From assembly GCF_037042905.1 (NCBI RefSeq), contig NC_087249.1, positions 42,098,001 through 42,162,000 of the forward strand: a stretch of DNA of 64,000 nt, read 5' to 3'. Positions 9,184-62,024 of the stretch are shown here, one piece after another (within the stretch, counting starts at the first letter, position 1; each line of letters opens with the position of its first letter). A program made the translations under genes and the position numbers. Origin of the DNA: Lytechinus pictus (lineage: Eukaryota). The notes under the pieces were generated by a model, which was not told where the DNA came from, did not search any database, and saw nothing but the letters and a program-made list of their open reading frames with translations.

Positions 9184-9424
9184 GTAAGTACGGTACTAAG
9201 TGGGCGGGGGACGGGGGGTGCGAGATCTTGCTCTACCGCTCAGATTGTGCGGGCTTTTACTTTAGTGTTCAGTTAGGTCTACTTTAATGTCAATATCCTA
9301 TTAGTATTACGATCGAAATGAAACAACATTTGTAATATATGTTCTTTCTTTATGCATGGTCATCGCTTATGCTATGCTAATGGCTATATTTTTTCTTATC
9401 TAGATCTATCTAGATCTTATCTAG

Positions 9425-9486
9425 ATTCCCATTCTGGGAAAAGCGCTCTATAAAAATTGGCTATTATTATTATTATTATTATTATC
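9425..9486 (+). mobile_element. 3' tail of a LINE/SINE (L2/CR1-type tail) ending in (ATT)n
   Basis: GGGAAAAGCGCTCTATAAAAATTGGCTATTATTATT... A similar GTGCT-ANAAAT-TATTATT tail occurs at ~10755-10815 and ends the SINEs at 39602 and 50870. Confidence 0.45.
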
Positions 9487-10342
9487 TAACTTACATGTAC
9501 CGGTACCGGTACCTGTACTTCAAGTTCAACCAGTTGAAATTGAAATTATTCAACTTATTCAATGACGACAGATCATGTCAATTTCTAGACCAAAAGCTTC
9601 AGTCTCTGTATTTTGGTTGTTCCGCTGAACTGCGTTGGCTCACTCACCAATACATAGACTGAAGGGCATGGAGGCCCGTACGTACAGACAACGTATTTTA
9701 GCAGTTACGTTAGATCTAACAGCGGAAACCCGATTTTCCGATCGTTTTTATGTACATAAAATGTCACATTATGAAAAAAAAATCACATCCATATTTACGA
9801 GAAAATGTTTAAAATTCAGAAATATCGTACCTTAGACCGCAGTTACCGCTAATTCCTTTCAAACGATAATCGAAACATCGTCATCTTCGATCCTTTCGTT
9901 GGTCAACGTAAGTTGCCATCTTGGATGACGTCATCATCCTTACAGACGTATTTACCAGTCGCTATATATCGCAATTTGTGCCGCTGCTTTGCGCTTGTAC
10001 ATGTAGATGTGCGTGCGTTCAGAACTTGTCGCTCGCATTGATTGGCCAAGATATCGACAATTTAATCGGAAAGCCTTGATAAAAGCACAATTCGTTGACG
10101 GCTGCCATATTTTCCTCTCCAGCAGAAAATTAAAAAATAAGGAATAACCCGGGGAATAACTCATCGGTAACGTATATTTTCGATATTTTATAGATTTTAC
10201 ATCGTATCAATAGAAAGATTAGAGTCTAAAGAAAATAGTGGGCCTTCGTTCAAGATAATATAATGTCATTTAGAATCTAAAAGAAATGAAAAATCTGGAC
10301 AAAACCCACCCTCCGAATTGTCGAGCCAGATTACACATGCAG

Positions 10343-11665
10343 GCTCGCACTAACACACTACCGTCGGTAAATGGGGATTATAGTAAAATGTCAGAAATTG
10401 TTGAATAAATCCCCAGAAACGACGGTTATTCCTGTCTAGTCAATTTCATGATTAATTGGTCTAGATCTTTAAACATGAAGCGAAGTTATTCATGTTAATT
10501 GTAACTTGGAGCAAACTGAAGTCGATGATTCTGTCGTCCCAATGCTGAATGAAGGTTAAATATGCTTACTGTGTAGTGAGTGTGTGAGGTTCGATTTATG
10601 TGTACTGTAGATATCAATGTGAGCATGACAAGCCATTCATGCAGCAATGGCAGGGTTATCTCCATCCTTGACTCTCTTAAAATCAAAATTTAAAAAATAT
10701 CTCTTTAGTTAAGAAAATATGCTGTGCAGACAGAAGTAAAAAGAGCTCTGAACAAGCGCAGCTGAATATATCCATATAAAAGCTGTGCTTTACAAATTAA
10801 TGTTTATTATTATATTTAGACCAAACGTTTCAGTCTCTCTGCATTTACATGTAGTTGTTTTGGTGAACTTCGTTGTGTGGGCTACACTAACCTGTAGTAC
10901 ATTGACTGAAGTCTCGTACATGTAGGCCCATGCCAGACAGACAATGCATTATAACTCAACTCACACATGTATTTAGAGATCATGAATTTAAGCGAAATTT
11001 TTGTTTGGACGCTTTGAAAATTACTCCATTATGAGAAGAAAAGATTATACAATTAGGAAGTTCATACCTTCAAAAAGTTGTAATTGTAAATTGCCATCTT
11101 ATCAGTGGCAATACATGTATATTGCGATTAGTGTCACTTCCTTTTGTTCATACACGTTCTGCACTTGTCACTCGCATAGATTAGCCAGGATATCAAAAAG
11201 CCTAATCAAACGGCCTTGATAAAAGCCTAATTAAAACAAACAAACTTGGCGTAAATACATGTATTCATATCTGAATGGTACGCGCCTTAAAACCCAAGAA
11301 AACAACGATAACAACTAGGCTGCCAGTTTTTAATCCCCAGCAATAATTTTTGAAAACCAAGAAACAAACATGGTTAACTTTTTTTCTGTAATTTAACATA
11401 TGATGATTAATATTACATGTGCAATAAATGTTCGAATCTAAGGAAAAAAGTGAGCCATCAAGTAAAATTATGCTTGATCTAGTAAAATGCTTAAATTCTA
11501 GACAAACGTACATTATTGTAAGTTAGTATTGGGCAACGTGTGTATTTGCGTAGCGCTCACAGTAACGTACTACTGTCTGCATCTACATGTAGGAATGATA
11601 GTAAAATGTCAGAAATCGTTAAATACTAGTAGATCCCCAGAAAAGACAGTTATTCTTGTGTAGGT
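10343..11665 (+). repeat. Diverged ~100-bp direct repeat pair (10343-10440 and 11553-11665)
   Basis: ATAGTAAAATGTCAGAAAT(T/C)GTT...ATCCCCAGAAA(C/A)GAC(G/A)GTTATTC appears twice about 1.2 kb apart. Confidence 0.8.
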
Positions 11666-12466
11666 ACATGTAATAGACAGGAAGCTGGGGCTTATCCCAA
11701 TCGCAGTTAGTAACTGTTTTAGCCTACATTATTGCATGCATCATTTCAACTCACCTCTCAAAACTGGTGATTTGCATTGAAATTTTTAGGTCTATTTCAT
11801 TATGATTTTTTCATAGAACACATGTAACAACGAAAGATTTCTTGGAATTTCCTGCTTTAAAACTGATCTGAATTTTTACTTTAAAAAGTATGAAAATAAA
11901 CAGTTTACTGGGGGCTTTTGGCTCCTTGCTGCAAATTATGCCCTTCACGACCTACAAGTATCAATAAATGGTAGCTGATATATGATCAGAGTTATCAACA
12001 GTTGTGTCGCACATAACATTATGGAACTCTGTCTAAATGTATGTTGCACTTGCCTTGCATTGCCAGCAGGAAGTGCATGAAATAGGCTCTGGTTGATCAA
12101 GTCTATTTAAATGACTACGTAAATGAATTTATTTTTGGTATTGGGGAAAAAAGATAAAATGTCAATTACTAACTAAATACTCTGACTTCGGAACCCTGCT
12201 TTCTGAAACTTTACTAAAAGCAAATGTTTCTAAAAGTAGTTCAGATCACTATAAAATTTACTAAAAAAATACAGTCTATATCCGACTAGTGGCAAAAATC
12301 AACCGTTAATTGTTTGTACATTGTATGATTGAATTTTTACAGACGTGTATCAATCAGATATGATTTTTGTTTAGATCTTGGACTGATCTTGAAACATTGC
12401 CATCTTAAAGATGGAAATAGCTTTGATAACAGGTGCACACTACAATGTGCAATTACTGTATCTATA

Positions 12467-12860
12467 CAATGCGTCCCAGAAAAAAGGAAACCGGGATTCC
12501 CATGTTTTTTTTTCTTCAAAGGCAAATTAATGATGGTATTTAATTTACATAATCATATAATTCAATAATTCCTCTTTATTTTGATACCTAATATGTGACG
12601 AACACTACACGCATTAATGAGCAAAACGAGTTTGAATTTGTAATGTCAAAACCAGGTTGAGCAGAAAAATTGGACAAGTTTGGTTCGCGATACGTCGAAC
12701 GTGCATATTCGACGATTGACTCATTAGCATTTCTTTTGTATTCTTTGTTAGGATTCTCTCGCCTTGTCAAATAGCTACATGTATATCAACTTCAGAAGGC
12801 AAATCATGATAATACACAAATCACATAATTACACACTTATCAGTAACTACCACAGGAAAT
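12467..12860 (+). mobile_element. Truncated Tc1/mariner-like non-autonomous element (left end only)
   Basis: TA|CAATGCGTCCCAGAAAAAAGGAAACC is a TA-CAGTG-type terminus followed by CpG-retaining sequence. The matching right TIR was not found and the right boundary is approximate. Confidence 0.45.
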
Positions 12861-13172
12861 CTGAATTTCAGCAAAAAAAAATCATAGATGCCCCCCCCCA
12901 AAAAAAAAAATGGTGTAAATGTAAGGATTATTTCCAAAGCATCCACAGACATGGACTTCCATATCCTTAGATTAATTGAAAACCTGAGAATCGTTGGATA
13001 AACCAAATTTTAGTACTAGTCCAGAGTTTATAGAGAATGACATTCTGCTTTAGAAGTTTCCTTGTATTTGATAAATATTTGCTCAAAGTACATGTATGTG
13101 TCATTAAAAAACTTCCTCCTGCCAGTGTTACTACAAAGTAGGTAAACCCTAAACTCTACATTATGTAGTAGT

Positions 13173-13353
13173 CAGGGGCCACGGAATGGGTTTTGAAAGT
13201 GAGAAGGCTGAGCCAAAAGTGGGAGGGGGGGTGACCATGCAAAAAATCACAATCAGATGGCAATTTTTATGTTTTAGTTAACGGTTGTGGGAAAAGGGGG
13301 GTGGGGGTGGGCTGAAGCCCCCAGCCCCCCCCCCCCCCGTTTTACGGTCCCTG
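13173..13353. mobile_element. hAT-like MITE
   Basis: Termini CAGGGGCC...GGTCCCTG with a degenerate 8-bp TSD, GTAGTAGT / GTAATCGT (6 of 8 match). Confidence 0.6.
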
Positions 13354-13591
13354 GTAATCGTAGTAGTAGTATTACATTGTAGTATAAGTGGTAGTAGTAG
13401 TACTTAGTTGTTGTTGTAATAGGAGCAGTAGTACTCTTATTGATATTGCATTGTTGTTTTAAAATTAATATTGACAAACTATAGACAGATTCTACAGATC
13501 TTCTACATGTACATGTATTTCTTTATTTCCTTCTTTATTGAAGAAAAAATATTTTCCAAGCATTCTTGGCTTTATTGTATTACAAAATGTA

Positions 13592-14456
13592 GGGGAAGGC
13601 GGGGTAAGTTGAGCATAGGGGCAAGTTGAGCCACCACCCCCAGGCCAATAATGAATGAGTCAGACATTATGGTAGTGTCATGTATTGATGACCCATTACA
13701 TAACCCTTAACCCCACCACATTGTTTTCAACTTTGAAACAAAAAGTACTTTTTTAGAGGGAAAAATACACATTTCAGCCAAAAAAGTAAAAAAGGGTGTG
13801 AAATAGAAAAGTGTTTTTACACACACACGTCTTTACATATGATAAAGACATAAGAACAACATTGTCAGTCCAGGTATGGATCTTCATTCTTGTCACAGTC
13901 TTTTACATGATGGATGTGCATAAGAAATGTGTGGATGCGAAATTATCCCATTAAGTTCGGACTGGGGTAAGTTGAGCCAGCCAACATGGGGAAAGTTGAG
14001 CCATGGTAATTCTTATGGTAATGTAAATAAAAACAAACAAACCTTAAAAAGTCATCAATATGCAGGCAGAAAAGAGCAAATTCACATGACAGTTCTTTTA
14101 CTTTTAGAGAATGTTAGTATTTATAGAGAATTAGCATGTGAAAAGACTTTAAATAAAAAATTGACATGCTGGTTCTTCCCGCATACATTTTGTACATAGT
14201 TTTTGTGGCTCAACTTACCCTACATGTAGAAGATGGCACAACTTACCCCTAAGATGGGGCAAATTGTGCCACTTGACATCGTTTTTTTCAAAGGTCACAA
14301 CGACTTTCAGTGTGGGGGTAGAAAGTTGTATATAGGTGAAAAAGTTTTCACAAGAATCATATTTAAAGGCAAGGTACTTATTTCTACAATATTATTAGTC
14401 ATATCAATTCTATCATGCAAAATGCAAAAAGTTTCACAACTTACCCCGCCTTCCCC
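13592..14456. mobile_element. Non-autonomous TIR DNA transposon, GGGG termini, TA target duplication (Tc1/mariner/pogo-like)
   Basis: Perfect TIR GGGGAAGGCGGGGTAAGTTG / CAACTTACCCCGCCTTCCCC flanked by TA on each side. The internal motif GGGG(T/C/A)AAGTTGAGC is reiterated near 13601, 13619, 13964 and 13988 and inverted near 14207 and 14238. Confidence 0.9.
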
Positions 14457-16232
14457 TACATATATTGTAAAATTGCTTTGAAGAAAATATCAGTTAGAGA
14501 AACATGAATAAAGTATCAGCATGATAAACATGAATGAAGTATGGATTGTATATCAGTAAGATATTTAAAGAAATTCCCAGATTTTTAAAATGAACTTTAT
14601 AATAAGTCATTTCTTTTGTAATTGAAATGCAATATAAAGTTTGAGAAAAAAAAAATGAATTAAAGCTGATATGAAATGAATGTAATGCATGAATAAATTT
14701 AATAAATTAATAAGTTCCAAGTTTCTATATTAAATGAATTAATCAATTACTGAATGAATAAACAATTGTGAAATATACATGTATATCAGCAAAATAAAAA
14801 ATGATATTGCATTATATAGTAATTTGTCAACAAAATGCAATAATTAGTATTTAACAAATAGTATGTGTTCACAAATTAAATATACATGTAGTACTAATGA
14901 TAATATAGTGCTATGTGTATGTTGCAATGCACATACAAGTAATGCAATTTCTCTCAATTTTAGAGATTGGTTTTGTTGAATAAACATGCCCTTTGATCTC
15001 TTCAAACTGCTTTGTATTTTGAAATTTATGATTATTTTTTCTGTTCTTTCCTTGTCGTTTCAAATACATCACTTGACATTTTACCTTCTGCCTGCTCAGA
15101 GCTCAGATACTCTACATGCTTCAAGAATAGGAAATACCTCTCTCAAAATATGACCAGAAACTATTAGAAACATTTTTGTTGGAAATATATCTTTACTCTT
15201 GATTAAACTCACCAGACTTGAAAGTAAAAAAAGGATGTGCTCTGTAAACAGAGACTCCAAATACTATACACTGTAGCTCCACCAGTAGTATCCAACTTGA
15301 AAAGGAAAAGCCTCAGATTTTTTTTTTTTGAGCTGGATTTGAAATTTTCCACTGTGTGCTTGCCGACCACTTGCCAGACATTATATTAAAATTCATTCTC
15401 TGTGTACTCATCATATACTTGTATGTATTTTCAATTACTAATATTGCAATGCAATATGAGAAAATTACCCATTTGGATTCACGGCAAAGACAAGCTTGGT
15501 CTTGTTCTGGATCGAAAGGCGCCCTTTGAGCCCTTCCGACTTTGATGATTTTGTGTTCCCCCCTCGTTTTCTCTCTCTCCTTCATTCCTACCCATTCACA
15601 AGGCCTATGTAACTCTCCTCCCCGGCAAACCGTCGCCGTCCCCAGTCACAGGGTATATTGTTTACATATTTGACTTTATTGGTCTCAAGCGACACACTAT
15701 TCTGTATTCATACCTCAGTATTGTCCTCAAACGTGTTCAACAGTAATTGTTCCAATTGTCTGCTTTAGTTGTACTGGGAATGCCCTATTCTTGATTTTGC
15801 AATTGTATACATTAAGCATTCACTTGTGTTTTTCAGGTCTTTATTCCATGTACACTTTCATTCATGTTGGTGTAAAGGTATTCCCCAGTCAGGGTTCCCC
15901 TCTTAGCTTACGTTTCTCTGTTTTATGATGACAAACTTTGTTGCTATGACAGTTTTTTGTGGTAGGTGCTAAATGTACACCGGTGAAGTCACCTGTGTCT
16001 GAACTGTACTTGAACATGTGCTGCCCTCCATGCATGTAACCTGCCTTGAGATTACCAATTTCAGACAAATATACTGTATTTAAAAGCTGACATTTCTCTG
16101 TGTTAACTTTATGTCGTATACCTAATTAAGCAAGTCCAACTCTGATTAAAAAATGTCTGCTTTTTGCCTTTCCCATATACATTTTACCTGACCATGAAAA
16201 CAAGACTAAATTCATGAGTATGCATGTTTTAA

Positions 16233-16470
16233 CCCTTTGCACGCTGATTTTGCAATTTTGCACATTTGTACAATTAAATCCAACAATCTAAATAATTAGT
16301 TTTCTCCCCTAACTTCACATTAGAGAAGCTAATAAATGGCAAAAGTTCTTGGACAACATCTATAATAATCATTAGTATCAATTGTTCAAATGAAAATCTT
16401 GAATCAAAGAAAATAACATGGAAACAATTGTCATTATTTTCCCCCAAAGTTGATTTCAGTGTGCAAAGAG
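16233..16470. mobile_element. piggyBac-like MITE
   Basis: TTAA|CCCTTTGCACGCTGA ... TCAGTGTGCAAAGAG|TTAA: TTAA TSD and CCC-type terminus. Confidence 0.75.
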
Positions 16471-17644
16471 TTAACTAGTGAATATGCAAAATGAGTGAAA
16501 AATAGATAACTGTTGTACATGTTGAGGATATACAATGCAATGCAGACTCATGTAACAAATCATTTATGTAATTACATGTGGGATTAAAGGCATTTTGAAT
16601 TTTGTTGTTAAAAAGCTTTATTTTTAGAATTAGTTGTGACGGATGTCTGCATACTTGTGCAAGGACTCTCATTGAAATGGTAGCATATCTTTCAATTATT
16701 GACTTAAGATAAATATTCAAATAAAATATGGGAAGTTCTTGGCATGTATGTGCAGTGCATCCAGCATATTTGTAGGAACATATTGTTGATTATTAAATTT
16801 ATCAAATTCCTCTTTATGATTTAGGCTACAAGTTTAATCCAAAGTACAAATATATTGACTTAAATTTGTTGTATTTGCATAGTATTCCAGACAAAGTAAA
16901 TCAGCCTCATGAAAAGAGCACATTTTCATTAGCCAGCCTCTTAGTTGAAAGATCAAATAGAATGCAACTCTCCAGTAAGAGTTTCTGTGAAAGCATTTTG
17001 AGAATTCATATAAAAGTCTAATTGCAGAGGATTTGCTTTATCTAATTCTCCAATTTACCCACTTAAAGTACAAATAATGTTCCGCTTTTATCGCTACATT
17101 TATCCTTCATCTTCTTCATTGAACGATGAACTCCGTGACCTTTTCATCTTTTGCGATTGAAGTCTGGTCTAGCTAACTATGAGAAAATTGGATTGGAGGA
17201 AAAAGTACATATGTCGAAGTATAATAATGGTAGAGATTGTTTAAAGAGGAGGGAGAGTACACAGCAATAAAATGTGTTTAAGATTAGAGTGAATTACCTA
17301 AAATAGGGAACCCCCTGCCATCTTGGCCACACCATACAGTGAGAGTTCAACCTAAAATAGTTTACTTTTTGTTTTAATTGTGCCTTCTCTGTTAAAATCT
17401 GAAAACACAAGGAGGAATTGAGTCAAGGAGATGGAGTGAGTTAGATGCGTTCCCATTAGCCCCTAAACATGCTCAACTTTGAGGTAGCGGGAGTGATTTT
17501 CATCTGTACCCATTTCAAAATTAAAAAGTATGTAGTTTTCAAGACTCCAACTTTTACCATGCAGTCCTTTTAGGATCTAGAAAAAAAACAGCACCAGGGC
17601 ATTTCAGGGCAAAGGCTTAATAAATTTTGCCCCTTCTAACATTA

Positions 17645-17774
17645 GGGGAGCAATTAATGAAACAAACAGTGGTTTTTCAATATTTGTTACAAGCAACTGA
17701 AATCTTTGCATCTGATTGGCTCAGAGCAAGATTATGAGTGAAGAATTACTATTCGTGTTATGAAATGCTTCCCC
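17645..17774. mobile_element. Degenerate ~130-bp MITE (GGGGAGC...ATGAAA family; second copy at 54165-54303)
   Basis: GGGGAGCAATTAATGAAAC ... GTTATGAAATGCTTCCCC. The core TGAAATC(T/C)TT...CTGATTGGC is shared with 54165-54303. Confidence 0.55.
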
Positions 17775-18559
17775 GGTCTTTCATAGCCATCTCTGCAGTG
17801 GTTTAGAACACCATCTTTATTTCATTATTTTGTTGTGTACCTTTTCCCCTATTTATGCCCTAGGTATTGAGCATGTTTTTCAAGACACATGTATATCCAT
17901 TGCCTGCCATAGAAAACCTTCAGGTGCTTTGTCAAAAGTGTATTCTCTTTCAATGTTTGCAAAGATGTCCCTCTTTGCTTGAGATAAAAGTCTGAAGCAA
18001 CACTCCTTTGCATCTGTATTGTAAGTTAAAAACTTAGCTTATAAAGGTACATGTATCTTGTGCATAATCTTATGCTTAAAAAGAAAATCATCTCGGGGTC
18101 AGCGTAACCAACTGTTTTGTCAATGTGTGGGACAATGAGAACGGGCCTGGAGAGCTTGTAGCACATACAGGAGCTGGCATTGAAGTCCTTTGGTCTTCCC
18201 ACTGTTTTCCAAGATCCCCGCTTCCCATAAGCCTAGAAGCACGATGTAATGGTCCCTCTGATGCAAAACTAGTCGGGACCCCTGCCGGTACAATTTGTAT
18301 CCCAATCTTGTGCCTGTCCCCAACCCTTCATGTATCTAGGGAATAGTTAGTTCTCACTTCACTGATATACATAAACCATGTTTAAAAGTACCTTGAATAC
18401 TTTTATCATGTTTAAAAATTCCCTGTGTATTTCTAAATCACATTTAGTGCTAAAAATCATGACCTGATTGGTTTTAGATAATCTTAAAATTATTAATTTC
18501 AAAGTTTGATATTATTTACAGGTAAAAAGTACTTCACATCTTAAAATATGCAAGATACA

Positions 18560-19440
18560 ATGTGATACAATGTACAGTCTGAAATATGATGATGAAATTG
18601 ACAATTAAGATATCTAAAGTGAAACCCCCAAAAGTAGTAATTTTCTTATTTTCTCTTTTTGCTGTATCAAACCAGGGATTGGTCTTATGCAAGATATATA
18701 CTTCCTATGTAAGTGTATTTGATTATGATATTTTTATCATATCAAGTCCTTTTACGCCTTTTGGACCCCATGCGCGCGCCAATGCTCAGCGGCGCTTGCA
18801 CAGTCGCACAAGCGCAGCCCGGCTAGCGCTAGGGCTATATGCTAGGGCACGGCGGCCGTGGCCCCTGCCTGCTGCACTGCATGCACTGCGCTGTCTATGG
18901 TGATATGCATTTTAGGTACAGTATGCGCCCGGCCCGAATATGACAACTTTTGCCATTGGCCTGTGGTCTGACACATGTTTATTTAAAGCTAAAACGCGAA
19001 CGCGAAGTTTGACCAATGAACATCATTCTTACATGTACATCATCGTAAAGCTTAGAGAAAACTGCACAATGACTCATGGAAACTAAGCTGTAAGATACTA
19101 TCAAGCGAAATTGGATCGAGTGGGAAATCGTTTGTGGTGACATAAAGTAGGATTTTACGTTGAGTTTCATCCTATTTTTGATATGAAAGGGGTGTTTTTT
19201 ACCCCAAAACGCGAATGTAATTAACATCTTTGCAAAAATTTCAATTATTTAATGGAAATAATATGGGATATCATCAGCATTATATCATTGAAACTAAGGA
19301 TAAAAGTGGGAACTTTTTTCAGGAATGACAAAATTGTTAACAAAACATGAAATTTCCAATGGTATTTCCATCTAGAGTGGTAGACACTCGCGGAAAGCAC
19401 GCGCAGTTAGTGTCCCATAGGATTCGATATGGGGCACAGA
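18560..19440. mobile_element. Probable non-autonomous DNA transposon remnant with a GC/CpG-rich core
   Basis: Abrupt CpG-rich block (18770-18940, 18990-19130, 19385-19440) inside a CpG-poor intron. Termini were not resolved, so boundaries are approximate. Confidence 0.3.
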
Positions 19441-29484: not shown

Positions 29485-29517
<33 letters not shown>

Positions 29518-47206: not shown

Positions 47207-47332
47207 ATCACTTTTTTAAAATATATTTCTGATGACATATCACTTTTTTAAAATATATTTCTGATGACATATCACTTTTTTAAAATATATTTCTGATGAC
47301 ATATCACTTTTTTTCTATATATTTCTGATGAT
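47207..47332 (+). repeat. Tandem repeat, 4 x 32 bp
   Basis: ATCACTTTTTTAAAATATATTTCTGATGACAT three times near-perfect plus one diverged copy. Confidence 0.92.
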
Positions 47333-47387
47333 GAGCCAACATATCTCTTCTTTAGTAAGAGTCCTTTCTCATCTAGTAAATATTTAA

Positions 47388-50576: not shown

Positions 50577-50869
50577 TTAACTGCCCACACAGACCTTGGT
50601 TCTTTACCCAGAATGCTACATTTCTTTTCTATCATGTAGTCTTAATGTTATATTTTTAATATACCCATTAAAATGAAAATTAATTTGTTGATTTAATCTT
50701 AACAGCATTCGTGCCACAAATGTTGCCAAGGAAAAGAAAGGATCATTGAATTCCCGGTACCTTCCAAATTTCCAATCCCTATCTGGATAGAGGGTGGTTC
50801 AATGCACAAGCTTGAGTGAGAGCATTAAGGCTTCAAACGAATTCATTTACAATACATATGTATTTTATT

Positions 50870-51150
50870 AAAATAATAAAATAATATAGGATGTGTATAG
50901 CTCATGTATCCACCTTGCTAGTTGCTCAAGGTGCTCCTATATTACCCCGGCTAAGCTAGTCTACCAATTCTGGTGCGCACAGCGTTTTGAGGAATTACTT
51001 CCTGCCGGTACCCATTTACCTCACCTGGGTTGAGTGCAGCACAATGTGGGTAAATTTCTTGCTGAAGGAAAACACGCCATTGCTTGGAATCGAGCCCACG
51101 TCCTTCATATTGAAAGACGAGAGTCTCAACCACTAGACCACAATGCCCCC
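50870..51150 (-). mobile_element. tRNA-derived SINE, same family as 39602, reverse orientation
   Basis: Reverse complement: GGGGCATTGTGGTCTAGTGG (A box), GGGCTCGATTCC (B box), TTCCTTCAGCAAGAAATTTACCCACATTGTGCTGCACTCAACCCAGGTGAGGTAAATGGGTACC, then a TATT tail. Confidence 0.85.
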
Positions 51151-52604: not shown

Positions 52605-53271
52605 TACCCCTTTCATATTGCGCCTTTCACCGGCGAACTTCACCGGCGAAGTTCGCCAGCGAAGGGGAAAGTGTCCAGTATGAAAGGTACACAGGAGAAC
52701 TTCACCTGTGAAGTTCGCCGGTGAACTTCTCCACCTCTAGAGGTGGAGAACTTCGCCGGCGAAACTGTTTCACCGGCGAAGTTCGCCGGTGAAAAGGCCA
52801 GTATGAAAGCAAACCGGAGAACTTCTCCTCTTTAATGACGTCAGAGGTCAATTTTTTTTCTCTCCCGAAGTCCCCTGCACCGAGATTCCGCGCGCGATAG
52901 TTGCAAGCTCAGCTGAATGCTATGGCCAAGTAGATACCCTCGAACATTTTTTTTTTTAAACTAACAATATTTATTAAAAAGCACTTTTTACATGTATAAA
53001 ATGCGCTAAGATATAAAAACAAGGTGATATTGTTTGTTTTTATCGTAATACTTCCAAAATATGTTGTAATTAATTTTTTTTATACCTTTTTGTAATAGGT
53101 AAGAAGTAATGTTTACAATTTTCTTTCGTTTGTTCTGCAATCGCCCGTTGACTTTCGCCGGGAAGAAATGTCAGTGCGAAAGGGTACATTTTTTTCTTCG
53201 CCGGGGAAGTGAGGAATGCGAGGCGGAGAAGTTCGCCGGTGAAAAATGAAGAGGGCAGTATGAAAGGGGTA
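52605..53271. mobile_element. PIF/Harbinger-like MITE, TACCCCTTTCATA termini, young and CpG-rich
   Basis: TAA|TACCCCTTTCATA ... TATGAAAGGGGTA|TAA with many direct and inverted TTCACCGGCGAA(C/G)TTC motifs and reiterated AGTATGAAAG. Confidence 0.92.
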
Positions 53272-54164
53272 TAATACAGAATCTGCCAATCTTCCAGGCT
53301 CTGTCAAAGCAATCTGTGCTGAAATCGACCCCTTGGTGAAATATCAAATGACCAGGCCTTGACTAGTAGAATAACTGGACACCATTCAAGTGTAATTGAG
53401 CATGGTTAAAGTGTGACCATGACTGGAGTGACTCATGACTGACCACTTCTTGGAACCATCAAACCTTTTAGCAGGCTTTTGCTCAGAGGGCCTCCACTGG
53501 TGGTGTGTTCCAGATTTCAGAGTTGCATGCTATGGGGTAATCATGGTGAACCTAAGGACAGGATAGGAAATAATCTTTATTTTTAGGTTCTTTTTTGTTG
53601 TTGCCACATTTAGGGTAATTGCTGGATTCTGGGCATTTCATTTGAATGGCTACTTATTTTGTTCAAAGAGCGATTATGCTCGAAAAGCATATGCAGAATA
53701 TTGATTTTCTAATTGTTCTTAAATGTTACTTGTGGAAGATCTTGGGACACCTTATGAAAAGATGGTCGCCCCAAAGCACATTCCATTTTGCCAATTTTAG
53801 GGGCAATTTTGGCTGTCATGCAGATGAAAATGACTGGTCCCCTTAAGTATTTTGTATGCTTAAAGGTACATTCGTAACTAAATGTCTTATTGAGGAAAAA
53901 ATCTCCTTGTTTTGCTCAAATGCTAGTATCTTCCAAGCTTTATCTGCACTGAAAAAAAAATCTATATCAAAAATATTATTGGTACATGCTGAGACTAGCA
54001 AACCCCTTGAGGCTCGGAGTGTAGATGAGAGTGACACTCAACAGACATAAAATGTACTTCTTACAACCCCTTGGGGGAATTGTAGAGACAAATTGTTTTG
54101 TAATGGATCAGTCCGACCAAAAGAGCGCTTCCAGGTCAGGCTAGCGACTGAAAGCAGTAGTCTT

Positions 54165-54303
54165 GGGGGAGCATCTCACGAACCAAATAGTGATTTTTTT
54201 TCACTGACTATCTGTTATAAGCTAGTGAAATCCTTACTCCTGATTGGCGCAGATCAAATTAGATAAAAATATTTTTTTAATACTTGTTTCATGAAATACT
54301 CCC
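54165..54303. mobile_element. Degenerate ~135-bp MITE (family of 17645)
   Basis: GGGGGAGCATCTCACGAA ... TTTCATGAAATACTCCC, with the shared TGAAATCCTT..CTGATTGGC core. Confidence 0.55.
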
Positions 54304-56355
54304 AGATCTGCATCTCAAACTAAAAAGTTCAAATAGAATGCAGGACCGGCCATGACATCTTTTCCTTTAGCAAGAAATGTATCCACATTGTGCTGCACTC
54401 GACCCATGTTAGGTGGAAGGTGTCCTGGAAGTATTCTAGTCTGCTGTGCAAAACCTTCACTTGAGTTAAGGGTCTAAATGTTCAGCCTACAACGACATGT
54501 GTGCTGAAGGCCCTCTCGCTCAAGATCAAAACAGCAAGTTTTCTATGTGCTAGTCTTTGCGTGGAGACCCACTTGTTGATCAGAGTTTCAATCAGGGTTT
54601 GTGCCAGCAGACTATATTGATTCCTTTAATGTATTGAACACTGGCAGTTGCAGCTTGAGATATTCAAAGCTAGGGTAACAATAATAGTTTTCCGTGGAAC
54701 AGGTTATTTCTAGCTAGATGGCGATGTATAATTAGCTATTATTATTATGTAACACAGAGTAAAAGGCTGGGATTTTGCCATGCCAGGTGTATGCTGCTGA
54801 TGCAGCCCCATTGATCTTTTTTAGTGGAAAATGGTACTTTTTCGATGTAAGTAAATCTCCTTTATAGTGGACTTCAGGCACAAAATTGGTGAAAGTACAT
54901 GCAGATAGCATGAAGGGTAAAATTTTAGAAATCATCCTGGTCTTAAAAGCAAAGCCATTATGGTGAGCTCTTTTCTTGTTGGCAATCATCTACAGTCTAG
55001 TAATCAGACTAGCAATTTTTAACCCCAAAGGGGACTTGCCCTGAAGCACCCAGGGTGGAAACAAATCTGTGTCCTCATCTAAGGACACCAATACACAGAC
55101 AGGCACATACCTCAACTTTACACCATCAGAAAATGTAGGGGGTCCAACAAATATTTATATCTCGTTTCATTTCAAGCAGTGTATGATGAGGAAATTATTA
55201 CTCATCCTGTGTAGTTCCACAGGGATGGTATGTGTAGCCGGAGGCAGCAGGCATTTCGCTCTCACCACCAGCCAGTCATTACCATAGGGAAGTAGTGGGA
55301 TGGGGAATGCTTTGAGGAGCAGCAAAACAGGTCTGCTGCTGTGGGATGGGATCGGTCCATGGTTTTGGCGAGTGGAAGTGGAAGAAGGAGCAGCGAACTT
55401 CTGGGACAAAGATTTATCGGGTATCTGTGTATCTTCTGACTCTCGAGTCGAAAAAGGATGACCATAAATAAAATTGCTCTTGGAAGAGAACTAACTGCGA
55501 AAGGTTCAAATGGCATCTCATGATGTCTGGGAATTTTCTAAAAATATGTTGCGCTTTAAATCATAAATGTTCCCTAGAACAATGACCCTCTTTTTATGTT
55601 GCTGCAATAATGAAGGTGTTAAAGGTTGCTTTAGGAGAAGGTCAATGTTCAGATACAGTAAATAATTTACCGGTATATTCTTTTTTCAGCCTATTCCAAA
55701 CTGAATTATATTCATTGGCCATCGAGAATGCAGTCATTATATGAGGTTTAAGTATGTACATGCGTAGGTAGTAAACTGATTTGGTAATACTTTGTGTTTA
55801 ATTTCATTCAGGTTAAATTTTTTATTTCTGAATAATATTGTGATAGTGCACAGATACGGTAAGCATTCGGATGGAAGCAAAATAAATTTGTCGCTCTTTT
55901 GTAAAAAACCTACAGTCTTGAGAGAAGCCAACACACCTGTGTATTCTCAAGCATTCTAAATTTAGGAAGAAGCCGATAAGTGAACTTTACTTATTTATGA
56001 CATCACAGAACATAAACAGTGTACCTTTTATGATTTCCTGAAGTAGTTTCGAAAGTGATACAATGTGAATAGTTAGTAACACCAATACTTCCACAAAAAA
56101 ATACTCAAAACTTCTTTCTGAAGTATAGACCTGTCCCTGAGTTAAAAAAAAAACATGCTCAGTGTTGCTTTCTTTGTCAATAGAAAACTATTGACAATAC
56201 CATGGAGATGAAATATCTCCATGAAGATTCAGGAAAATGCCCTTTTATTTCCAGCAAACTGATCTTCTCTGAAAAATTTGAAGTTTTTTATTTAAAAAAT
56301 GCATGTCTATGAATGATATACCTTCGTTGGCTGCGGTTGGCATATCATGGACCTG

Positions 56356-56916
56356 GTGGGTGTTTCATAAAGCTGTTCGTAAGTTCCGATTGCCTTGATG
56401 TACGATTGGTGATCCTATCTTGTGGTTAATTATGTGCACCAGATCTTCATTGGTAATGGTATTGAAGGCTTAGAAAGGATCACTAGTTTGTAAAGTCACT
56501 CATAAGTTATACCCCTTTCATAAACCCAATTATGCGGCTGATAGCAGCATAATTTGGTCGTAAAATCGGAGGAGGACCAGAGTTATCCGCATTATTTTGA
56601 TGCTGCAATTATCCGCATAATAGCGGCATCGGGACCAGATTTTGACTTTATGAACGCATTTTCAAATAATGCGGATAATTGCCATGGTGCGGTCACAAGG
56701 TCACCCTTTACCAACGCAACCGCATCGAAGGGGGCGTGTGCAGTTGTCATGACGATTGTTCGCCTTTTACAGGAAGGGCGCTCGTAAAAATAGTGTGGAT
56801 TATTTTCGGAGTTTGTGAACGCAATTTTTATTGAATTATCCGCATTACTCTTAGGCGGCTTATTGGAGGATGGGTTTATGAAAGGGGTATTACAATAAGC
56901 TTTATGAAATACCCAC
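56356..56916. mobile_element. MITE family D, copy 2, split by a nested insertion
   Basis: GTGGGTGTTTCATAAAGCTGTTCGTAAGTT is identical to the start of 37520. The right end AGCTTTATGAAATACCCAC resumes after 56892. Confidence 0.85.
56510..56889. mobile_element. Nested PIF/Harbinger-like MITE, TACCCCTTTCATA termini
   Basis: TTA|TACCCCTTTCATAAACCCA ... TGGGTTTATGAAAGGGGTA|TTA: perfect 19-bp TIR and TTA TSD, with internal TTATCCGCAT/ATGCGGATAA repeats. Confidence 0.92.
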
Positions 56917-59130
56917 CAGATTTCATTTTAAGTATTCTTAAATCATCAAACGAATTGACAATGTGTCTCCTCTAACTTACGTCTGCGGTATTTTGTTTTT
57001 CAGATTATGCTCACATTTGAACAATCCTCTTGACGTTTGCATCTAACGTGAACATGTATTTTCCCATTCAATGCTGGTTCAAGTCCACATGTGAACGTGA
57101 CCTGGATGAAGTGGTGATGAAGAATCTTTGAGGATCTTTTTTTTTGTTGAGCCTACCCCTGTGGTCTTGGATCTCATAAATGAAGTCCTCACTCTTCTCC
57201 CCTGCAGGGGGTAGTATATGGCTTTGGACTTGGGTCAAATCCAATTTCATAGACCCCCTCCCTATTCTTTCTTTTTCTCACTCTCTCTCTCATTCCATCT
57301 CTTCTTCCAAAGAATCTCCAATAAGTTTGAAGTAATCACCCCAATGCTCACTATTCCCCATTCACTTGGTTTTTCTTTCTGTATTGTCAGTATTTTGTCT
57401 TTTCTAACTTTCTTCTACTTTCTCCTGTTTCTCAATCATTTCATTCTTTCTATCCATCGCTACATTCTTCTCAATCTCCCTGACTACCCCCCCCCCCCAT
57501 TCACCCGTCTTATTGACACATGCTATTCCCCCATTTTTTTGCCCATGCCTTTTTAAGCATTTATGGTTGAATTATTTGAGACCTCATTTCAAGACTTTTA
57601 ACCCTTGCCCCCTTTTCCTCTATCTCCTTTCGTTTTGACTCTGTTGAAATCCATCCCCATTTTCCCTTGCCTCTTTTCCCCTGTCTCTTTCTTACCCTTC
57701 ACCCATCTCTTCCCATTTTCCCCACGCCCCACTTTTCCTCCTATCTATGACACCATCTTCTAGACTAAATTACATTCAATTATGTCTTTGTGATTGAATG
57801 GGTTAATCCTGTGACTTTTGCCCTTCCCCCATTCCTATTCTCTCATCCCCCCTCGTACATTCCCATCCCTTTCATACTTTATTGCCTTCTTATTTTTCTC
57901 TAAATAGTTGACAAAAGAGAACATCCGTCCCTTTCTTCTCTCTCTCGAGATCTGTATACCCCAATTTTCCTTCATCTTTATAAATGGTCCACTTGGGTCG
58001 ACATGGTGACTTTCAGGAGAGAAGAACCTCCAGTGATATCAATTATCGACAGACCCTCTATTTGATGGGATGCATGGCGCACTGCACGGTTATCCTATTT
58101 TATACAAAATGGTGCAATTTAACCGAGCAGTGATGGCGTAATTATACTGATCTGACATTCAATCAACATTGTCTGGGTTTAGATTCAAGTGAGTTGTATT
58201 CATAGGACACCTCAAAGACAGTCTTGTCAGATTTTAGGAGATCACCGGATTCCTACGGCACCAGCTTTAATTGGTAAAGATCATCACAATGTTGGTTGGA
58301 ATACCAGAATAATGGATCCAGTGAAAAACAATGTTATTCTAGACATCCCTTTCATTATTTACCGGTATGCCATCCGTTTTATGAAAGATGCTGCTATATC
58401 TTAAAAGAAGATTTGATTTTTGATTAAATTCAACCATTATGTACTTATGTTTTTAATTGTTTGCTTTGTAATCATATTGTACTTCACTTATCTGTAAAGT
58501 GACCCTTCAACTTGTGCTGCTGGTCAATATTTCCCCATATGTACACCAATGAAAAATACTTGAAATAAATTGCATTGTCATTCTACATACAAAGTTAATT
58601 TAATTTACAAAGAGTAAATTGTTTTGTAATGTTTGGGTTTTAATCAATTATACTACCACCAAATTAATTTGGCGTTGGTACATTTAGATCTGTGATTCAT
58701 TTGACCCATTTCATGGAAGACATAACAGTAAAAATTTACATTACTTTTTGTTAAAAAGATTACTATTGGATTGTGGCATTTGATTTTTTTTCTCAGTTCT
58801 GTGAAGTGTAGACACTGAATTTGGTTAAAACTCCATAATTTGCCCTGAAAAATACTTTAGATACTCTATCAATAATTATTTATGTAGACATTGTGTTTTG
58901 TTTTTCTCCACACATGTACCTCTGTATTATAAACTCTAGATATATGTGATGACCACCACCACACCATCCCTCCCTCTCTCCCTTCTTGAGATCCAAAGGA
59001 CATGGGTAATCAAATACTTTAAAGAATGAGAGAGCACCATCACTGTTTGTATAATTATCTGTTGAATTGCATGTATATAGTTTTCCTCTGAATTTCTGTT
59101 TTGGTTACCTGTCGCTGGATGGTATTAAAG

Positions 59131-59579
59131 CAGACCTGCCAACCATTACGTTTTGGGCGTATTTAGTACGTTTTTGCAACCAAAATACGGCAGTACGTTT
59201 TTTCTTTAAAAAATATGTTTTTGTAAAAAATATATATATATATATTTTTTTTAACAAAATGGTAATTTATTGAGAAAAATCATCTCTATATGTCTCTATT
59301 TCATAAAACTTACACAAATATGGTTATTAGATCAATGTAATTTCAGGTAACTTTTTTTTTTTTCAATCATTTTGTTGAAACCAGGGTGAGATATACACAT
59401 CTTTAAATGTTTTTTTTTTCATCTGCAAGAGCAGTGCGCATTTTAGCTTGCATGCAGCTTGAGCGCCGCGATGAGCGAGTGCGCCACGGATTTGATTATG
59501 AAATACACTTTTTGGGGGAAAAATGCACTTTTTTTAATCACAAAATACAATTTTTCATTCCCAGAGGTTGGCAGGTCTG
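59131..59579. mobile_element. hAT-like MITE with a 6-bp target duplication
   Basis: TTAAAG|CAGACCTGCCAACC ... GGTTGGCAGGTCTG|TTAAAG: perfect 14-bp TIR and exact 6-bp direct flank. Confidence 0.88.
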
Positions 59580-60533
59580 TTAAAGCATGCATCTACTTGC
59601 AGAAGTGTCAGATGGTTGTTCGTTCAAATCCCACCTTGGCATTTCCTTTCTCCATAAGATGTTGATCTACATTTGCCCCTCTCCACCCGGGTTATTAATG
59701 GGTGTATGATAATAATTTGATTGTATTGTTTTAGGTAAATTGTGCTTGGGAGCTTTCCCCCCTATTGTGTGTTCCCCAGGGAGTGGAGAATAAGGGGAAG
59801 CCAAATCCGATGACAGTGTTAATGATTCCTAATAATTCGCCTTTCTCCCTATTTTTTTTCCCATAATTTCTAGATAAAGAATTAATGCATACCTGTCAAT
59901 ATTTACATGCACATAAAAACTTCTAACATTTTTTTTAGTGATGCTTTGCCTGGCTTTGCCACAGTCATTTCCATTTAAATTGCTTGTAAATCTATTTGAA
60001 TTGGGTTCTTAAATAGGCTCGCATTGACACGTCTTAACGCATCGCCCCTCCTCCTTACATGTACATGTATGAAGACAATTATATGTGTCCTTCATGGCAT
60101 TTACCAAGGTATGTTCTCATCTAACATAGATTTGAGCAGATGTATATACAGAGTTTGCTTTAATTATCTTTTATTTCAAACCTCTAAAAAATTCTGTATA
60201 TTGAAAATTAAAATCGTTCATTTCATCTTTCAACACTTATTTTCTCAATTCATTATTATCCGCATCCAGTTCAGCTTCCAGAGGTGGAGTGAGCGAGAAG
60301 GAGGGATGCAGACAAAACTGCGGAGGAACATTTAAGTTATGCAGGGAGAAATGATGAAAGGATTTGTGTGGGACTGAAATAGCCATTCTTGGATTAGGGT
60401 CGGACTGAGAGGGGAATGAGATGTGATGGATGGGGAGAGGTATGGAGGGGTGAAACAATGTATAGAACAACGCTGCTCCCTCACACATTCAATAATACTT
60501 AGTATATGATACCGTATCACTATTGCTGCATAT

Positions 60534-60703
60534 ACACTCGCAGAAATTGTTTAACCAACCTATTAAGTTTTTTAAAATATGAAATGACAAACAGTTGGTT
60601 AAAACCAAATTGCATGCAACATGAATTGGATTGATTTAAACCAATATTTGGTCGATTCATATTTTAAAAACTTTTGGGTTGGTGAAAAGAATTCTCAAGA
60701 GTT
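60534..60703. mobile_element. Degenerate CACT-type hairpin MITE
   Basis: TA|CACTCGCAGAAATT...CCAACC..AAGTTTTTTAAAATATGAA and inverted TTCATATTTTAAAAACTT..GGTTGG...AATTCTCAAGAGT. Confidence 0.5.
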
Positions 60704-62024
60704 TATTTGGCATGATCACCTGCTATTTTGAATGATATTTTGTGTTTCCCTGCACTGTTTGTAGGCCTATATATCCAAGGAAAAGTGTCTAATTCCTGTC
60801 TACCTCCATGCTGGTACATGTGCGAGTTTAATCAGTGACTAGTTCTACACTGGGCCAGATGTACAGGATCCTAACAGTGACAAACCCAATAAAAGACATG
60901 GTTTTTCATTGTTATACATAATCATAATATTACATTTGGTGAAAATGTATGTGTTAAATACTAGTGAAAAAACTCTTGCATCTTTCATTTAATAGAAGAG
61001 TTTCTTTTGGCAGATGTCTATTTATTAAACTGTGCTTCTTGAAGAAATTTTTATCCTCCAGAATAGAACCAATATACGGAGGTTGGTCCATTAGCATGGA
61101 GAAGTGCCGTTAGTTTTACCTGCATCTTTGTGGTGCAGGGTGGCAAAAGGAGAATGTCTCTTTTAACCAAGTGAGGAATGTCTCGCGTCAGACATTAACG
61201 TAGTTTGATCAGCAGCGGTAGCTCGGTGCGGATCCCGGGCTAACTCCGGCAAGATCTAATGCTCATCAGAGCTGTCAGGGCTTTAAGGAATGATTTCGAA
61301 TCCATCAATCGTGGCCTTGCAGAAGCGCCATTGGCCTTGGCACGACCTCATTTCGTTTCCCTGCCCCTTGTCTCCGGCATGCTCCACGTGTGAACCTATG
61401 CAGGCTGACGCATTCCTCCCTCCCGATTGCAAAACCTGCCGAAAATCCCTTGTCTAAACTGTCGCCGAAAAACCAAACAGAGTCATCACTTTTCACGCAT
61501 AGACATCTGGTAGGAATTTGGGAGGTTTTCAGATTTTTCTTCTTCCTCTTTTTTGTGGAAGATTTTTTCTGTATTTCTATTTTATATTTTAGGATATAGG
61601 TCCAGGAAAGGGTGGTTGCAGAAATACATGTAGTATTGTTAGGAGAGAAATCTATAAGAATATTTGATTGATTGATAGATAGAATGAAAGGAAGGTAATG
61701 ACAGTATATACCAACAGAATAGACAACAATGGGACTTCAGTAACTTCAGGGTAAATGAGTAAAATCCGGGAAGTAATCCAGTACATGCACGTAAATGCTC
61801 AATATCAAATGATAATGAAGAGATAAATATGTTTAAATGAAAATAATATTTTGCCGCAATAAGACAGAATCTTATAGGATAAGGCTACTAAAAAGTGAAT
61901 ATTATACTTTGAGGCTACAATCTAAATGCCAAGGTCTTAGAGACTGAATTGATGCCGCTCATTAAAAACAATTGGCCATACTGGGAGAAGCACAGATTTT
62001 TTCGTTCTGAATAGAGGAGCTTTT

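What the first reader, a model, noticed from the sequence alone, without database searches (positions are those of the whole stretch)
9398..61632. Pervasive TA-[palindrome]-TA 6-bp micro-insertions: a fossil record of transposon excision inside one gene
Seen: TACATGTA occurs at least ~30 times by eye after 9.4 kb (e.g. 9492, 10846, 10917, 11112, 11256, 11584, 11665, 13504/13510, 14221, 24193, 25037, 30494, 60056), against about 2 expected from base composition. TAGGCCTA occurs about 8 times (22439, 23185, 25260, 33029, 39992, 51932, 52192, 60762); TACCGGTA, TACTAGTA and TAGATCTA also recur. Paralog alignment shows these are insertions. CCAGTA[CCGGTA]AACTAG at 40522 corresponds to CCAGTAAACT in the two sister MITEs. 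GTA[CATGTA]CCTACTATT at 24193 corresponds to TTACCTACTATT at ~25222. AGTA[GGCCTA]CACGTA at 25260 corresponds to ATTACGCGTA at ~24234. GAGTA[CATGTA]TGTGC at 25037 corresponds to GAGCATGTGC at ~24044. AATA[CTAGTA]GATCCCC at 11624 corresponds to AATAAATCCCC at ~10404. Established: Tc1/mariner elements duplicate TA and can leave the two terminal bases of each end on excision (the Tc1 TA-CA-TG-TA footprint). Inference: each word is the footprint of a family with CA..TG, GG..CC, CC..GG, CT..AG or GA..TC ends, so insertion followed by excision is a major, largely unannotated mutational process here. TA-flanked elements with CA (12467) and GG..CC (13592-14456) ends are present in this window as candidate sources.
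Basis: partly seen in the sequence, partly recalled or inferred. Interest (0 to 1): 0.85.

Follow-up and report, generated by a model that had tools for sequence, protein, structure and literature searches.

The report
Jumping-gene excision scars in an intron
One long intron of a sea urchin gene is peppered with identical six-letter insertions at TA sites; they are best read as scars left when cut-and-paste jumping genes landed and left again, a known kind of scar seen here at unusual density.

Summary
TACATGTA occurs 37 times (1.2-3.4 expected), TAGGCCTA 8 times (about 0.4) and TACCGGTA 6 times (about 0.3). These are the three most enriched of all 256 eight-base palindromes. The window is Lytechinus pictus: FGF exon 1, then MICU3-like exon 1 (8950-9183), then over 54 kb of MICU3 intron 1, which holds all 37 TACATGTA.

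The words are real 6-bp insertions at TA. Against the L. variegatus orthologue, six of eleven alignable sites are clean TA versus TA-NNNN-TA indels, arising in both lineages. Two further words are private to one copy of a repeat, and a third is missing from most other copies of its family. Control palindromes never align to 6-bp gaps.

Three results support Tc1/mariner excision footprints:
- TA-flanked inverted-repeat families here end in CA..TG, GG..CC and CC..GG.
- The flanks carry the Tc1/Sleeping Beauty A(-3)/T(+3) target preference (52% against 34%).
- CpG-decay precursors are not abundant.

TACTAGTA has weak support and TAGATCTA none. No site was found in all three states (occupied, scarred, empty), and no transposase was examined. 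Density is 14-fold lower in the adjacent FGF locus, which is unexplained.

The scan noted the same signal in at least 13 other windows of this genome. The mechanism is known; this density appears unreported.

The parts
8950..9183 (+). Exon 1 of the MICU3-like gene (calcium uptake protein 3, mitochondrial-like). All of 9184-64000 is its intron 1.
   Evidence: tblastn of S. purpuratus MICU3 isoform P0014 gives 80% identity over residues 1-82, and no later exon is found in the window. The L. pictus gene model XP_063955582 spans 111.7 kb.
1368..2135 (-). ORF holding exon 1 of the FGF gene, head-to-head with MICU3. The FGF side of the window has no TACATGTA.
   Evidence: 100% identical to L. pictus XP_063956486. 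There are no TACATGTA in window 1-9491. The whole L. pictus FGF locus plus intergenic DNA holds 2 per 41 kb.
9492..61632 (.). Field of 37 TACATGTA, 8 TAGGCCTA and 5 TACCGGTA words in MICU3 intron 1. About 1.2% of the intron's TA dinucleotides are affected.
11112..11119 (.). TACATGTA where L. variegatus has plain TA, a clean 6-bp indel.
   Evidence: L. pictus reads CAGTGGCAA-TACATGTA-TATTG and L. variegatus reads CAGTGGCAC-TA-TATTA.
11624..11631 (.). TACTAGTA where L. variegatus and an internal paralogue (about 10404) have plain TA.
11584..11591 (.). TACATGTA shared with L. variegatus apart from one substitution (TGCATGTA there). It is either an older scar or a chance word.
14221..14228 (.). 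TACATGTA inside the GG..CC element. Most other genomic copies of that family lack these 6 bases.
   Evidence: read laying reports 'left out 2' at 14221 plus 'left out 4' at 14224 in most of the contig depth of runs X11 and X12, and in a minority of runs X13 and X1.
40522..40529 (.). TACCGGTA private to one copy of a small non-autonomous element (MITE). The sister copies at 34913-35338 and 46241-46674, and copies in L. variegatus, read CCAGTAAACT.
25260..25267 (.). TAGGCCTA aligned to a 6-bp gap in the paralogous segment 24089-24266.
9492..9511 (.). Stacked words TA-CATG-TA-CCGG-TA-CCGG-TA. Other stacks lie at 13504-13517 and 60056-60069 (TA-CATG-TA-CATG-TA).
13590..14458 (.). TA-flanked high-copy element with GGGGAAGGCGGGGTAAGTTGAG inverted repeats (GG..CC ends), the candidate source of TAGGCCTA.
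   Evidence: Word depth in the runs is very high.
56510..56889 (.). TA-flanked element with CCCCTTTCATAAAC inverted repeats (CC..GG ends), the candidate source of TACCGGTA. A second copy lies at 52605-53271, and the family is also in L. variegatus (L003 13141-13583).
12465..12512 (+). TA followed by the left end CAATGCGTCCCAGAAAAAAGGAAACCGGGATT of a Tc1-like CAGTGCGTCCCAG family (CA..TG ends), the candidate source of TACATGTA. The right end was not located in the window.
   Evidence: About 45 bases match the end of the complete TA-flanked element L003 60103-60895.
38501..38653 (.). Run of N inside the intron. It was not read and no conclusion crosses it.

Best explanation
The words are excision footprints of Tc1/mariner-type cut-and-paste elements, mostly non-autonomous copies moved by a transposase encoded elsewhere.

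Proposed sequence of events: an element integrates at a TA and duplicates it. On excision the transposase cuts the non-transferred strand two bases inside each end. Each flank therefore keeps TA plus a 2-nt 3' overhang made of the element's terminal bases. End joining fills in both overhangs and ligates them, so TA becomes TA-XY-Y'X'-TA. Families ending CA..TG, GG..CC and CC..GG give TACATGTA, TAGGCCTA and TACCGGTA.

Shown here: the words are 6-bp insertions at TA; they arise independently in both Lytechinus lineages; the inner bases match the ends of the TA-flanked families present; and the flanks carry the transposase target preference.

Inferred, not shown: the 2-nt stagger, the fill-in joining, that an element actually sat at each site, and that the regional clustering reflects where elements land, are tolerated or hop locally.
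For: Enrichment is 10- to 30-fold and confined to three 4-base inner palindromes.

Insertion status:
- In 40 kb of L. pictus / L. variegatus alignment, 4 of 17 clean 6-bp indels are TA[CATG x2, GGCC, CTAG]TA against TA, two carried by each species.
- Window words 11112 and 11624 are 6-bp gaps in L. variegatus.
- Words at 40522 and L003 48084 are private to one of 4-7 repeat copies.
- The word at 14221 is missing from most other family copies.
- Non-enriched control words (TATTAATA, TAACGTTA, TAGTACTA, TATCGATA) align without 6-bp gaps.

Sources: every end found of the CAGTGCG..., GGGGAAGG... and CCCCTTTC... families is flanked by TA. By contrast, candidates with AA or AG 'ends' prove to be TTAA-duplicating elements and have no matching footprint excess.

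Target signature: T at +3 (equivalently A at -3) occurs in 77 of 148 half-sites (52%). It occurs at 34% of all TA sites and at 28% of control-word flanks (chi-square p = 2e-5). Sleeping Beauty's consensus is ANNTANNT, with A(-3)/T(+3) the conserved positions (PMC8934666).

Mechanism literature: staggered cuts of Tc1, Tc3 and mariner leave 2-bp footprints and Sleeping Beauty leaves 3-bp ones (bioRxiv 10.1101/659086; PMC7827188). A Tc1/mariner element (Minos) integrates in the L. pictus germline (PMC11361634).

Both elements and footprints are absent from the FGF loci of both species.
Against: - No site was seen in all three states (element, footprint, empty) within the 44 kb that could be compared between species.
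- No transposase gene lies in the window, and none was matched to these inverted repeats.
- In C. elegans the commonest Tc3 footprints are reported as TACATA and TATGTA. Those 6-mers are not enriched here (31 against 25 expected; 30 against 31), and no 4-bp TA[CA]TA or TA[TG]TA indel occurs between the species. The repair outcome therefore differs from the best-studied case.
- Footprints outnumber resident CA..TG elements by roughly ten to one.
- Density varies 14-fold between adjacent genes and drops to zero over 13 kb inside the intron. Neither is explained.
Confidence: 0.8

Rival explanations
1. Some other TA-specific break-and-repair process, not involving a resident transposon at the site, inserts short palindromes. 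Examples would be a nuclease or domesticated transposase cutting at TA, or aborted integration followed by repair.
For: No occupied allele was seen at any footprint site. Footprints greatly outnumber elements. The repair product differs from the common Tc3 footprints. Density tracks particular gene bodies rather than being uniform.
Against: The inserted bases are constant whatever the flank, so they are not copied from the flanks. Only inner words equal to the ends of the TA-flanked families present are enriched. The flank preference is that of an integrating Tc1/mariner transposase.
Confidence: 0.1
2. The words are a compositional product: CpG decay of TACGCGTA, TACACGTA or TACGTGTA in a methylated gene body, or selection for a binding motif.
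For: The intron is CpG-depleted (observed/expected 0.50) while the footprint-free FGF locus is not (0.95). Single-substitution neighbours of TACATGTA are mildly enriched (73 against 43 expected).
Against: The supposed precursors are at background in unmethylated FGF DNA (2, 1 and 0 copies). The words align to 6-bp gaps, not to substituted words, at most alignable sites. The excess of TACATGTA in the intron survives an order-2 Markov background fitted to the intron itself (37 observed against 2.3 expected), and the window-wide excess survives orders 1-3. L003 has 24 kb of CpG-poor DNA with no TACATGTA.
Confidence: 0.04
3. The words spread by slippage or duplication of a 6-bp unit, or by inheritance within repeat families, rather than by independent events.
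For: There are stacked copies: TACATGTACATGTA at 13504 and 60056, and TACCGGTACCGGTA at 9498. Parts of 9.5-14.5 kb are high-copy repeats.
Against: Flanks are unrelated at nearly all sites. Words are private to single repeat copies. Different words are stacked together at 9492-9511, which slippage cannot do.
Confidence: 0.03

Closest known systems
Tc1 / Tc3 excision footprints of Caenorhabditis elegans (Tc1/mariner superfamily, 2-nt staggered cleavage)
   Same: A TA duplication is kept. The inserted bases are the element's terminal CA and TG. The element ends begin CAGTGC-like. TACATGTA is the complete two-overhang product.
   Different: The commonest Tc3 products are reported as TACATA and TATGTA (bioRxiv 10.1101/659086). 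Here the full 8-base form dominates and the shorter forms show no excess. Families with GG..CC and CC..GG ends contribute as well. The scars are fixed germline history at about 1 per kb, not experimental revertants.
Sleeping Beauty canonical footprint and target preference
   Same: The target preference is the same: TA with A at -3 and T at +3 (PMC8934666; here). Footprints equal the overhangs left on the donor flanks after end joining (PMC7827188).
   Different: Sleeping Beauty leaves 3-nt overhangs and a 5-bp net insertion (TACAGTA / TACTGTA). Those words are not clearly enriched here (5 against 5.0 expected; 9 against 4.4).
Minos (Tc1-like) 6-bp footprint
   Same: A Tc1-family element that leaves a 6-bp net insertion, so a reading frame is preserved. 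This is from my own memory of the Drosophila literature and was not checked here. Minos is active in the L. pictus germline (PMC11361634).
   Different: As I recall it, the Minos footprint is TA plus four terminal bases of one end. Here the inner four bases are palindromic, that is two from each end. The equivalent one-end words TACAGTTA and TAACTGTA occur 0 times.

Membership tests
Tc1/mariner excision footprint | The net insertion sits at a TA and keeps TA on both sides (a retained target-site duplication). | tested here: met
   Clean TA against TA-NNNN-TA 6-bp indels between species and between repeat copies. Among 17 clean 6-bp indels, TA is the commonest duplicated dinucleotide (6, of which 4 are the palindromic words).
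Tc1/mariner excision footprint | The inner bases equal the terminal bases of the two ends of a TA-duplicating inverted-repeat element in the same genome. | tested here: met
   CAGTGCG... (CA..TG), GGGGAAGG... (GG..CC) and CCCCTTTC... (CC..GG) families are all flanked by TA. A CT..AG candidate lies at L003 47856-50711.
Tc1/mariner excision footprint | The sites show the transposase's target-site preference (ANNTANNT). | tested here: met
   T at +3 / A at -3 in 52% of 148 half-sites against 34% of all TA sites, p = 2e-5. The consensus is from PMC8934666.
Tc1/mariner excision footprint | The same site is found occupied by the element in another allele or species (occupied, footprint and empty states). 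| tested here: inconclusive
   None was found among the large indels of the 44-kb L. pictus / L. variegatus comparison. That locus is almost free of such elements, so the test had little power.
Tc1/mariner excision footprint | An autonomous partner encodes a DD34E/D transposase that recognises these inverted repeats. | not tested
   No transposase ORF lies in the window. The rest of the genome was not searchable with these tools.
Tc1/mariner excision footprint | A 2-nt staggered cut at the element ends, followed by fill-in joining. | not testable with these tools
   This needs a biochemical or in vivo excision assay. It is inferred from the 2+2 composition of the words.
CpG-decay product of a methylated gene body | CpG-containing precursor words are abundant where DNA is unmethylated, and the words align without gaps to such precursors. 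| tested here: not met
   TACACGTA, TACGTGTA and TACGCGTA occur 2, 1 and 0 times in 41 kb of FGF DNA with CpG observed/expected 0.95. Most alignable words face 6-bp gaps.

The most novel reading that the evidence does not exclude
Footprint density may be set by germline chromatin state rather than by chance. Two head-to-head neighbours differ 14-fold. The CpG-depleted (presumably gene-body-methylated) MICU3 intron has 0.68 TACATGTA per kb. The CpG-rich developmental FGF locus is at background in both species. If the elements integrate, or are tolerated, preferentially in such gene bodies, or hop locally within them, the scars would be a base-resolution historical map of germline transposition and chromatin domains. 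They would also be a large share of the short indels in one of the most polymorphic animal genomes.
Probability: 0.3. Interest if true: 0.7.

Novelty: new member of a known kind. Interest (0 to 1): 0.55.

Why it matters
Cut-and-paste elements do not multiply by moving, so their past activity is normally invisible once they leave a site. Here the departures can be counted: about one scar per kilobase, affecting about 1.2% of the TA sites in this intron. Each scar can be assigned to a family by its inner four bases and dated by comparison between species.

That makes several things measurable in sea urchins: excision rates per family and lineage, target choice, repair outcome (full two-overhang fill-in rather than the shorter products reported from C. 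elegans), and the regional bias. It also flags a specific, unannotated source of 6-bp indels that comparative and population analyses of Lytechinus genomes should model. The underlying mechanism is textbook, and the scan had already noted and once followed up the same signal elsewhere in this genome.

Tried and rejected
- **Read laying.** Much of that stretch is high-copy repeat, so the output was dominated by family variation. It gave only one usable result (14221). Contigs of runs X11-X13 were identical to the window in the unique parts, so they showed no polymorphism.
- **Orthologous L. variegatus sequence for the rest of the intron.**
  - The exon-1 ORF is not on record.
  - A representative search with exon 1 found only fragments.
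  - The L. variegatus MICU3 models lack exon 1 and start about 180 kb downstream. L003 therefore does not overlap the window.
  - The L. pictus gene spans 111.7 kb and is too long to be served as DNA.
  - Direct interspecies evidence for the window therefore stops at 11668.
- **Later MICU3 exons.** An EF-hand pattern search and tblastn for later exons found nothing in the window.
- **Rfam.** No hits.
- **Literature.** Searches for TACATGTA, for CATGTA with footprint, for sea urchin with excision footprint, and for footprint indels found no report of a genome-wide excess.
- **CpG-decay derivatives of CpG-containing footprints.** TAGTGCTA occurs 4 times but its reverse complement 0 times, and TACTGGTA and TACCAGTA 0 times. 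This is inconsistent and no conclusion was drawn.
- **Large indels between the species.** None was a TA-flanked element facing a footprint.


Full report
**What the window is**

The ORF at 1368-2135 (- strand) is 100% identical to exon 1 of an FGF gene of Lytechinus pictus (XP_063956486). The L. variegatus orthologue falls in the same 90% cluster. The L. pictus locus L002 contains the reverse complement of window 1-12118.

Window 8950-9183 (+) is exon 1 of a MICU3-like gene, 80% identical to the S. purpuratus protein. No later exon lies in the window. The annotated L. pictus gene (XP_063955582, 393 aa) spans 111.7 kb.

**The observation**

| Word | Observed | Expected (shuffles) | Expected (Markov order 1-3) |
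|---|---|---|---|
| TACATGTA | 37 | 1.24 | 1.3-3.4 |
| TAGGCCTA | 8 | 0.44 | 0.3-0.55 |
| TACCGGTA | 6 | 0.30 | 0.3-0.5 |

- No dinucleotide-preserving shuffle reached the observed counts; the Markov values are.
- These words are ranks 1-3 among all 256 eight-base palindromes.
- Among TA-N(2-6)-TA words, nothing else stands out apart from microsatellites.
- TACTAGTA and TAGATCTA (3 each) are not significant by count.
- Flanks are unrelated from site to site.
- Stacks occur: TA-CATG-TA-CCGG-TA-CCGG-TA at 9492-9511, and doubled CATG at 13504 and 60056.

**Are they insertions?**

I fetched the L. variegatus FGF locus (L001) and aligned it to the L. pictus locus. This gave 40 kb aligned at 83-91% identity. 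I excluded the part of L002 that corresponds to the window's N run at 3106-3243. L002 contains no N at all; I did not read or print the letters that correspond to the window's N run.

Of 17 clean 6-bp indels, four are TA[CATG], TA[CATG], TA[GGCC] and TA[CTAG] followed by TA, each against plain TA in the other species. Two are carried by each species. No 4-bp TA[CA]TA or TA[TG]TA indel occurs.

Within the window:
- 11624 (TACTAGTA) and 11112 (TACATGTA) face exact 6-bp gaps in L. variegatus.
- 11584 is shared with one substitution.
- 8142 and 9711 are shared intact.
- 9998 is messy.

Over all alignable sites of the enriched words in either species, six of eleven are clean 6-bp indels and one more is probable.

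Repeat copies give polarity:
- TACCGGTA at 40522 is absent from three or four other copies of its small non-autonomous element (MITE).
- A TACATGTA in L003 (48084) is absent from five or six other copies in both species.
- The six bases at 14221 are missing from most other genomic copies of the surrounding element.

Control palindromes that are not enriched (TATTAATA, TAACGTTA, TAGTACTA, TATCGATA) align without 6-bp gaps.

**Are they transposon footprints?**

Three independent results say yes.

1. Sources exist with the right ends. A scan for TA + inverted repeat + TA found three families, and every end found is flanked by TA:
   - GGGGAAGGCGGGGTAAGTTGAG at 13590-14458, which is very high-copy.
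   - CCCCTTTCATAAAC at 56510-56889 and 52605-53271, and in L. variegatus.
   - A Tc1-like CAGTGCGTCCCAG family: complete copies in L003 at 60103-60895, a related family at 33994-34971, and a left end at window 12467.

   Candidates whose apparent ends were AA or AG prove to be TTAA-duplicating elements. The matching words are not enriched.

2. The flanks carry a transposase signature. After removing half-sites that face a stacked neighbour, T at +3 (equivalently A at -3) occurs in 77 of 148 half-sites (52%). It occurs at 34% of all TA sites and at 28% of control words (p = 2e-5). A is also depleted at +1. Sleeping Beauty's majority consensus is ANNTANNT, with A(-3)/T(+3) the conserved positions (PMC8934666).

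3. The alternatives fail.
   - CpG decay would need abundant TACACGTA, TACGTGTA or TACGCGTA in unmethylated DNA. The FGF locus (CpG observed/expected 0.95) has 2, 1 and 0.
   - Copying from the flanks would give site-specific insertions, not a constant CATG.
   - Slippage cannot stack different words.

**Mechanism and how it differs from the textbook case**

Tc1/mariner transposases cut the non-transferred strand inside the element. The donor flanks therefore keep short 3' overhangs of element sequence, and end joining turns these into footprints. Tc1, Tc3 and mariner give 2-bp footprints and Sleeping Beauty 3-bp ones.

Two 5'-CA-3' overhangs cannot pair. Fill-in and blunt joining gives TA-CA-TG-TA. 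This step is inferred.

The commonest Tc3 products in C. elegans are reported as TACATA and TATGTA. Here those 6-mers are at expectation and the full form dominates. Urchin germline repair thus appears to keep both overhangs. Minos, a Tc1-family element, integrates in the L. pictus germline (PMC11361634).

**Distribution**

| Region | TACATGTA | CpG observed/expected |
|---|---|---|
| L. pictus MICU3 intron 1 (in the window) | 37 per 54.7 kb | 0.50 |
| L. pictus FGF locus plus intergenic DNA | 2 per 41 kb | 0.95 |
| L. variegatus FGF locus (L001) | 2 per 44 kb | about 0.95 |
| L. variegatus MICU3 downstream part (L003) | 16 per 62 kb | about 0.4 |

- The difference between the first two rows has binomial p = 1.5e-7.
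- The TA-flanked families are likewise absent from both FGF loci.
- CpG depletion is not sufficient. The first 24 kb of L003 and window 39.9-53.0 kb have no TACATGTA (P about 1e-4 for the latter). The start of the intron (9184-10500) has CpG observed/expected 1.3 and still carries 2 TACATGTA, and the next 1.5 kb (0.60) carries 6, the densest stretch.
- The pattern fits elements and scars accumulating where insertions land and are tolerated, perhaps reinforced by local hopping. This is not shown.

**Limits**

- No site was seen in occupied, scarred and empty states. The only comparable 44 kb is nearly free of these elements.
- No transposase was examined.
- Orthologous sequence for 11.7-64 kb could not be obtained.
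- The N run at 38501-38653 was left unread, and nothing depends on it.

**Relation to earlier notes and the literature**

The scan's index lists 13 first-reader notes of the same TACATGTA excess in this genome. One follow-up reached the same reading on another window. I treated these as leads only. Full-text searches found no published report of such a genome-wide excess.

**Verdict**

The kind of scar is known; the density and family spectrum are unusual. Interest 0.55.

Noticed in passing
window 1-9491 against 9492-64000; L002, L001: Sharp contrast between two head-to-head genes. The FGF side has CpG observed/expected about 0.95, 90% identity to L. variegatus, few large indels and no TA-flanked inverted-repeat elements. 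The MICU3 intron has CpG observed/expected 0.50, about 83% identity and many elements. This looks like an unmethylated, constrained developmental domain abutting a methylated gene body.
   Followed up: partly
L001 / L003 (L. variegatus CM031015.1) and window 8950-9183: The L. variegatus MICU3 models (300-324 aa) lack the N-terminal exon that lies next to FGF. The annotated model starts about 180 kb further on. Either intron 1 is about 180 kb in L. variegatus or the annotation misses exon 1. The L. pictus model (393 aa, 111.7 kb) appears to include it.
   Followed up: partly
window 12317, 13373, 20016, 43924, 44335, 52185: TACATTGTA occurs 6 times (0.7 expected) but its reverse complement only once. 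It could be a 7-bp footprint variant (TA-CA-T-TG-TA), but the strand asymmetry argues against a symmetric process. At 52185 it abuts TAGGCCTA.
   Followed up: no
L002 / L001 alignment (FGF locus): Six of 32 clean 3-bp indels between the species are TA[A]TA or TA[T]TA against TA. This may be AT slippage, or retained 3-bp duplications of TWA-targeting elements.
   Followed up: no
window 16230-16473, 47385-48325, 49975-50579 (also L003 54631-55220): Inverted-repeat elements flanked by TTAA, for example TTAA|CCCTTTGCACGC...; these are piggyBac- or Kolobok-like small non-autonomous elements (MITEs). No matching footprint word is enriched, as expected for precise excision.
   Followed up: partly
window 33591-33956 and 35336-36215: Two tandem-repeat arrays (HSP offsets of about 73-75 bp and about 80-160 bp). 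The second begins right at the end of the element copy 34913-35338 and produces the long spurious ORFs at 35324-36390.
   Followed up: no
window 39603-39761 and 50990-51149 (-): Two diverged copies of a tRNA-derived SINE-like element (GGAGCGTTGTGGCCCAGTGG...GGTTCGAATCCC head).
   Followed up: no
window 3106-3243: The public record of the same chromosome (L002) contains no N, so this N run looks like a mask rather than an assembly gap. The letters were neither read nor used.
   Followed up: no
window 10420-11090: About 650 bp present in L. pictus and absent in L. variegatus, bounded by CCTGTCT / CCATCT rather than TA. L. pictus also holds an internal duplication (10343-10439 against 11555-11663), so this stretch has a complex history.
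   Followed up: partly
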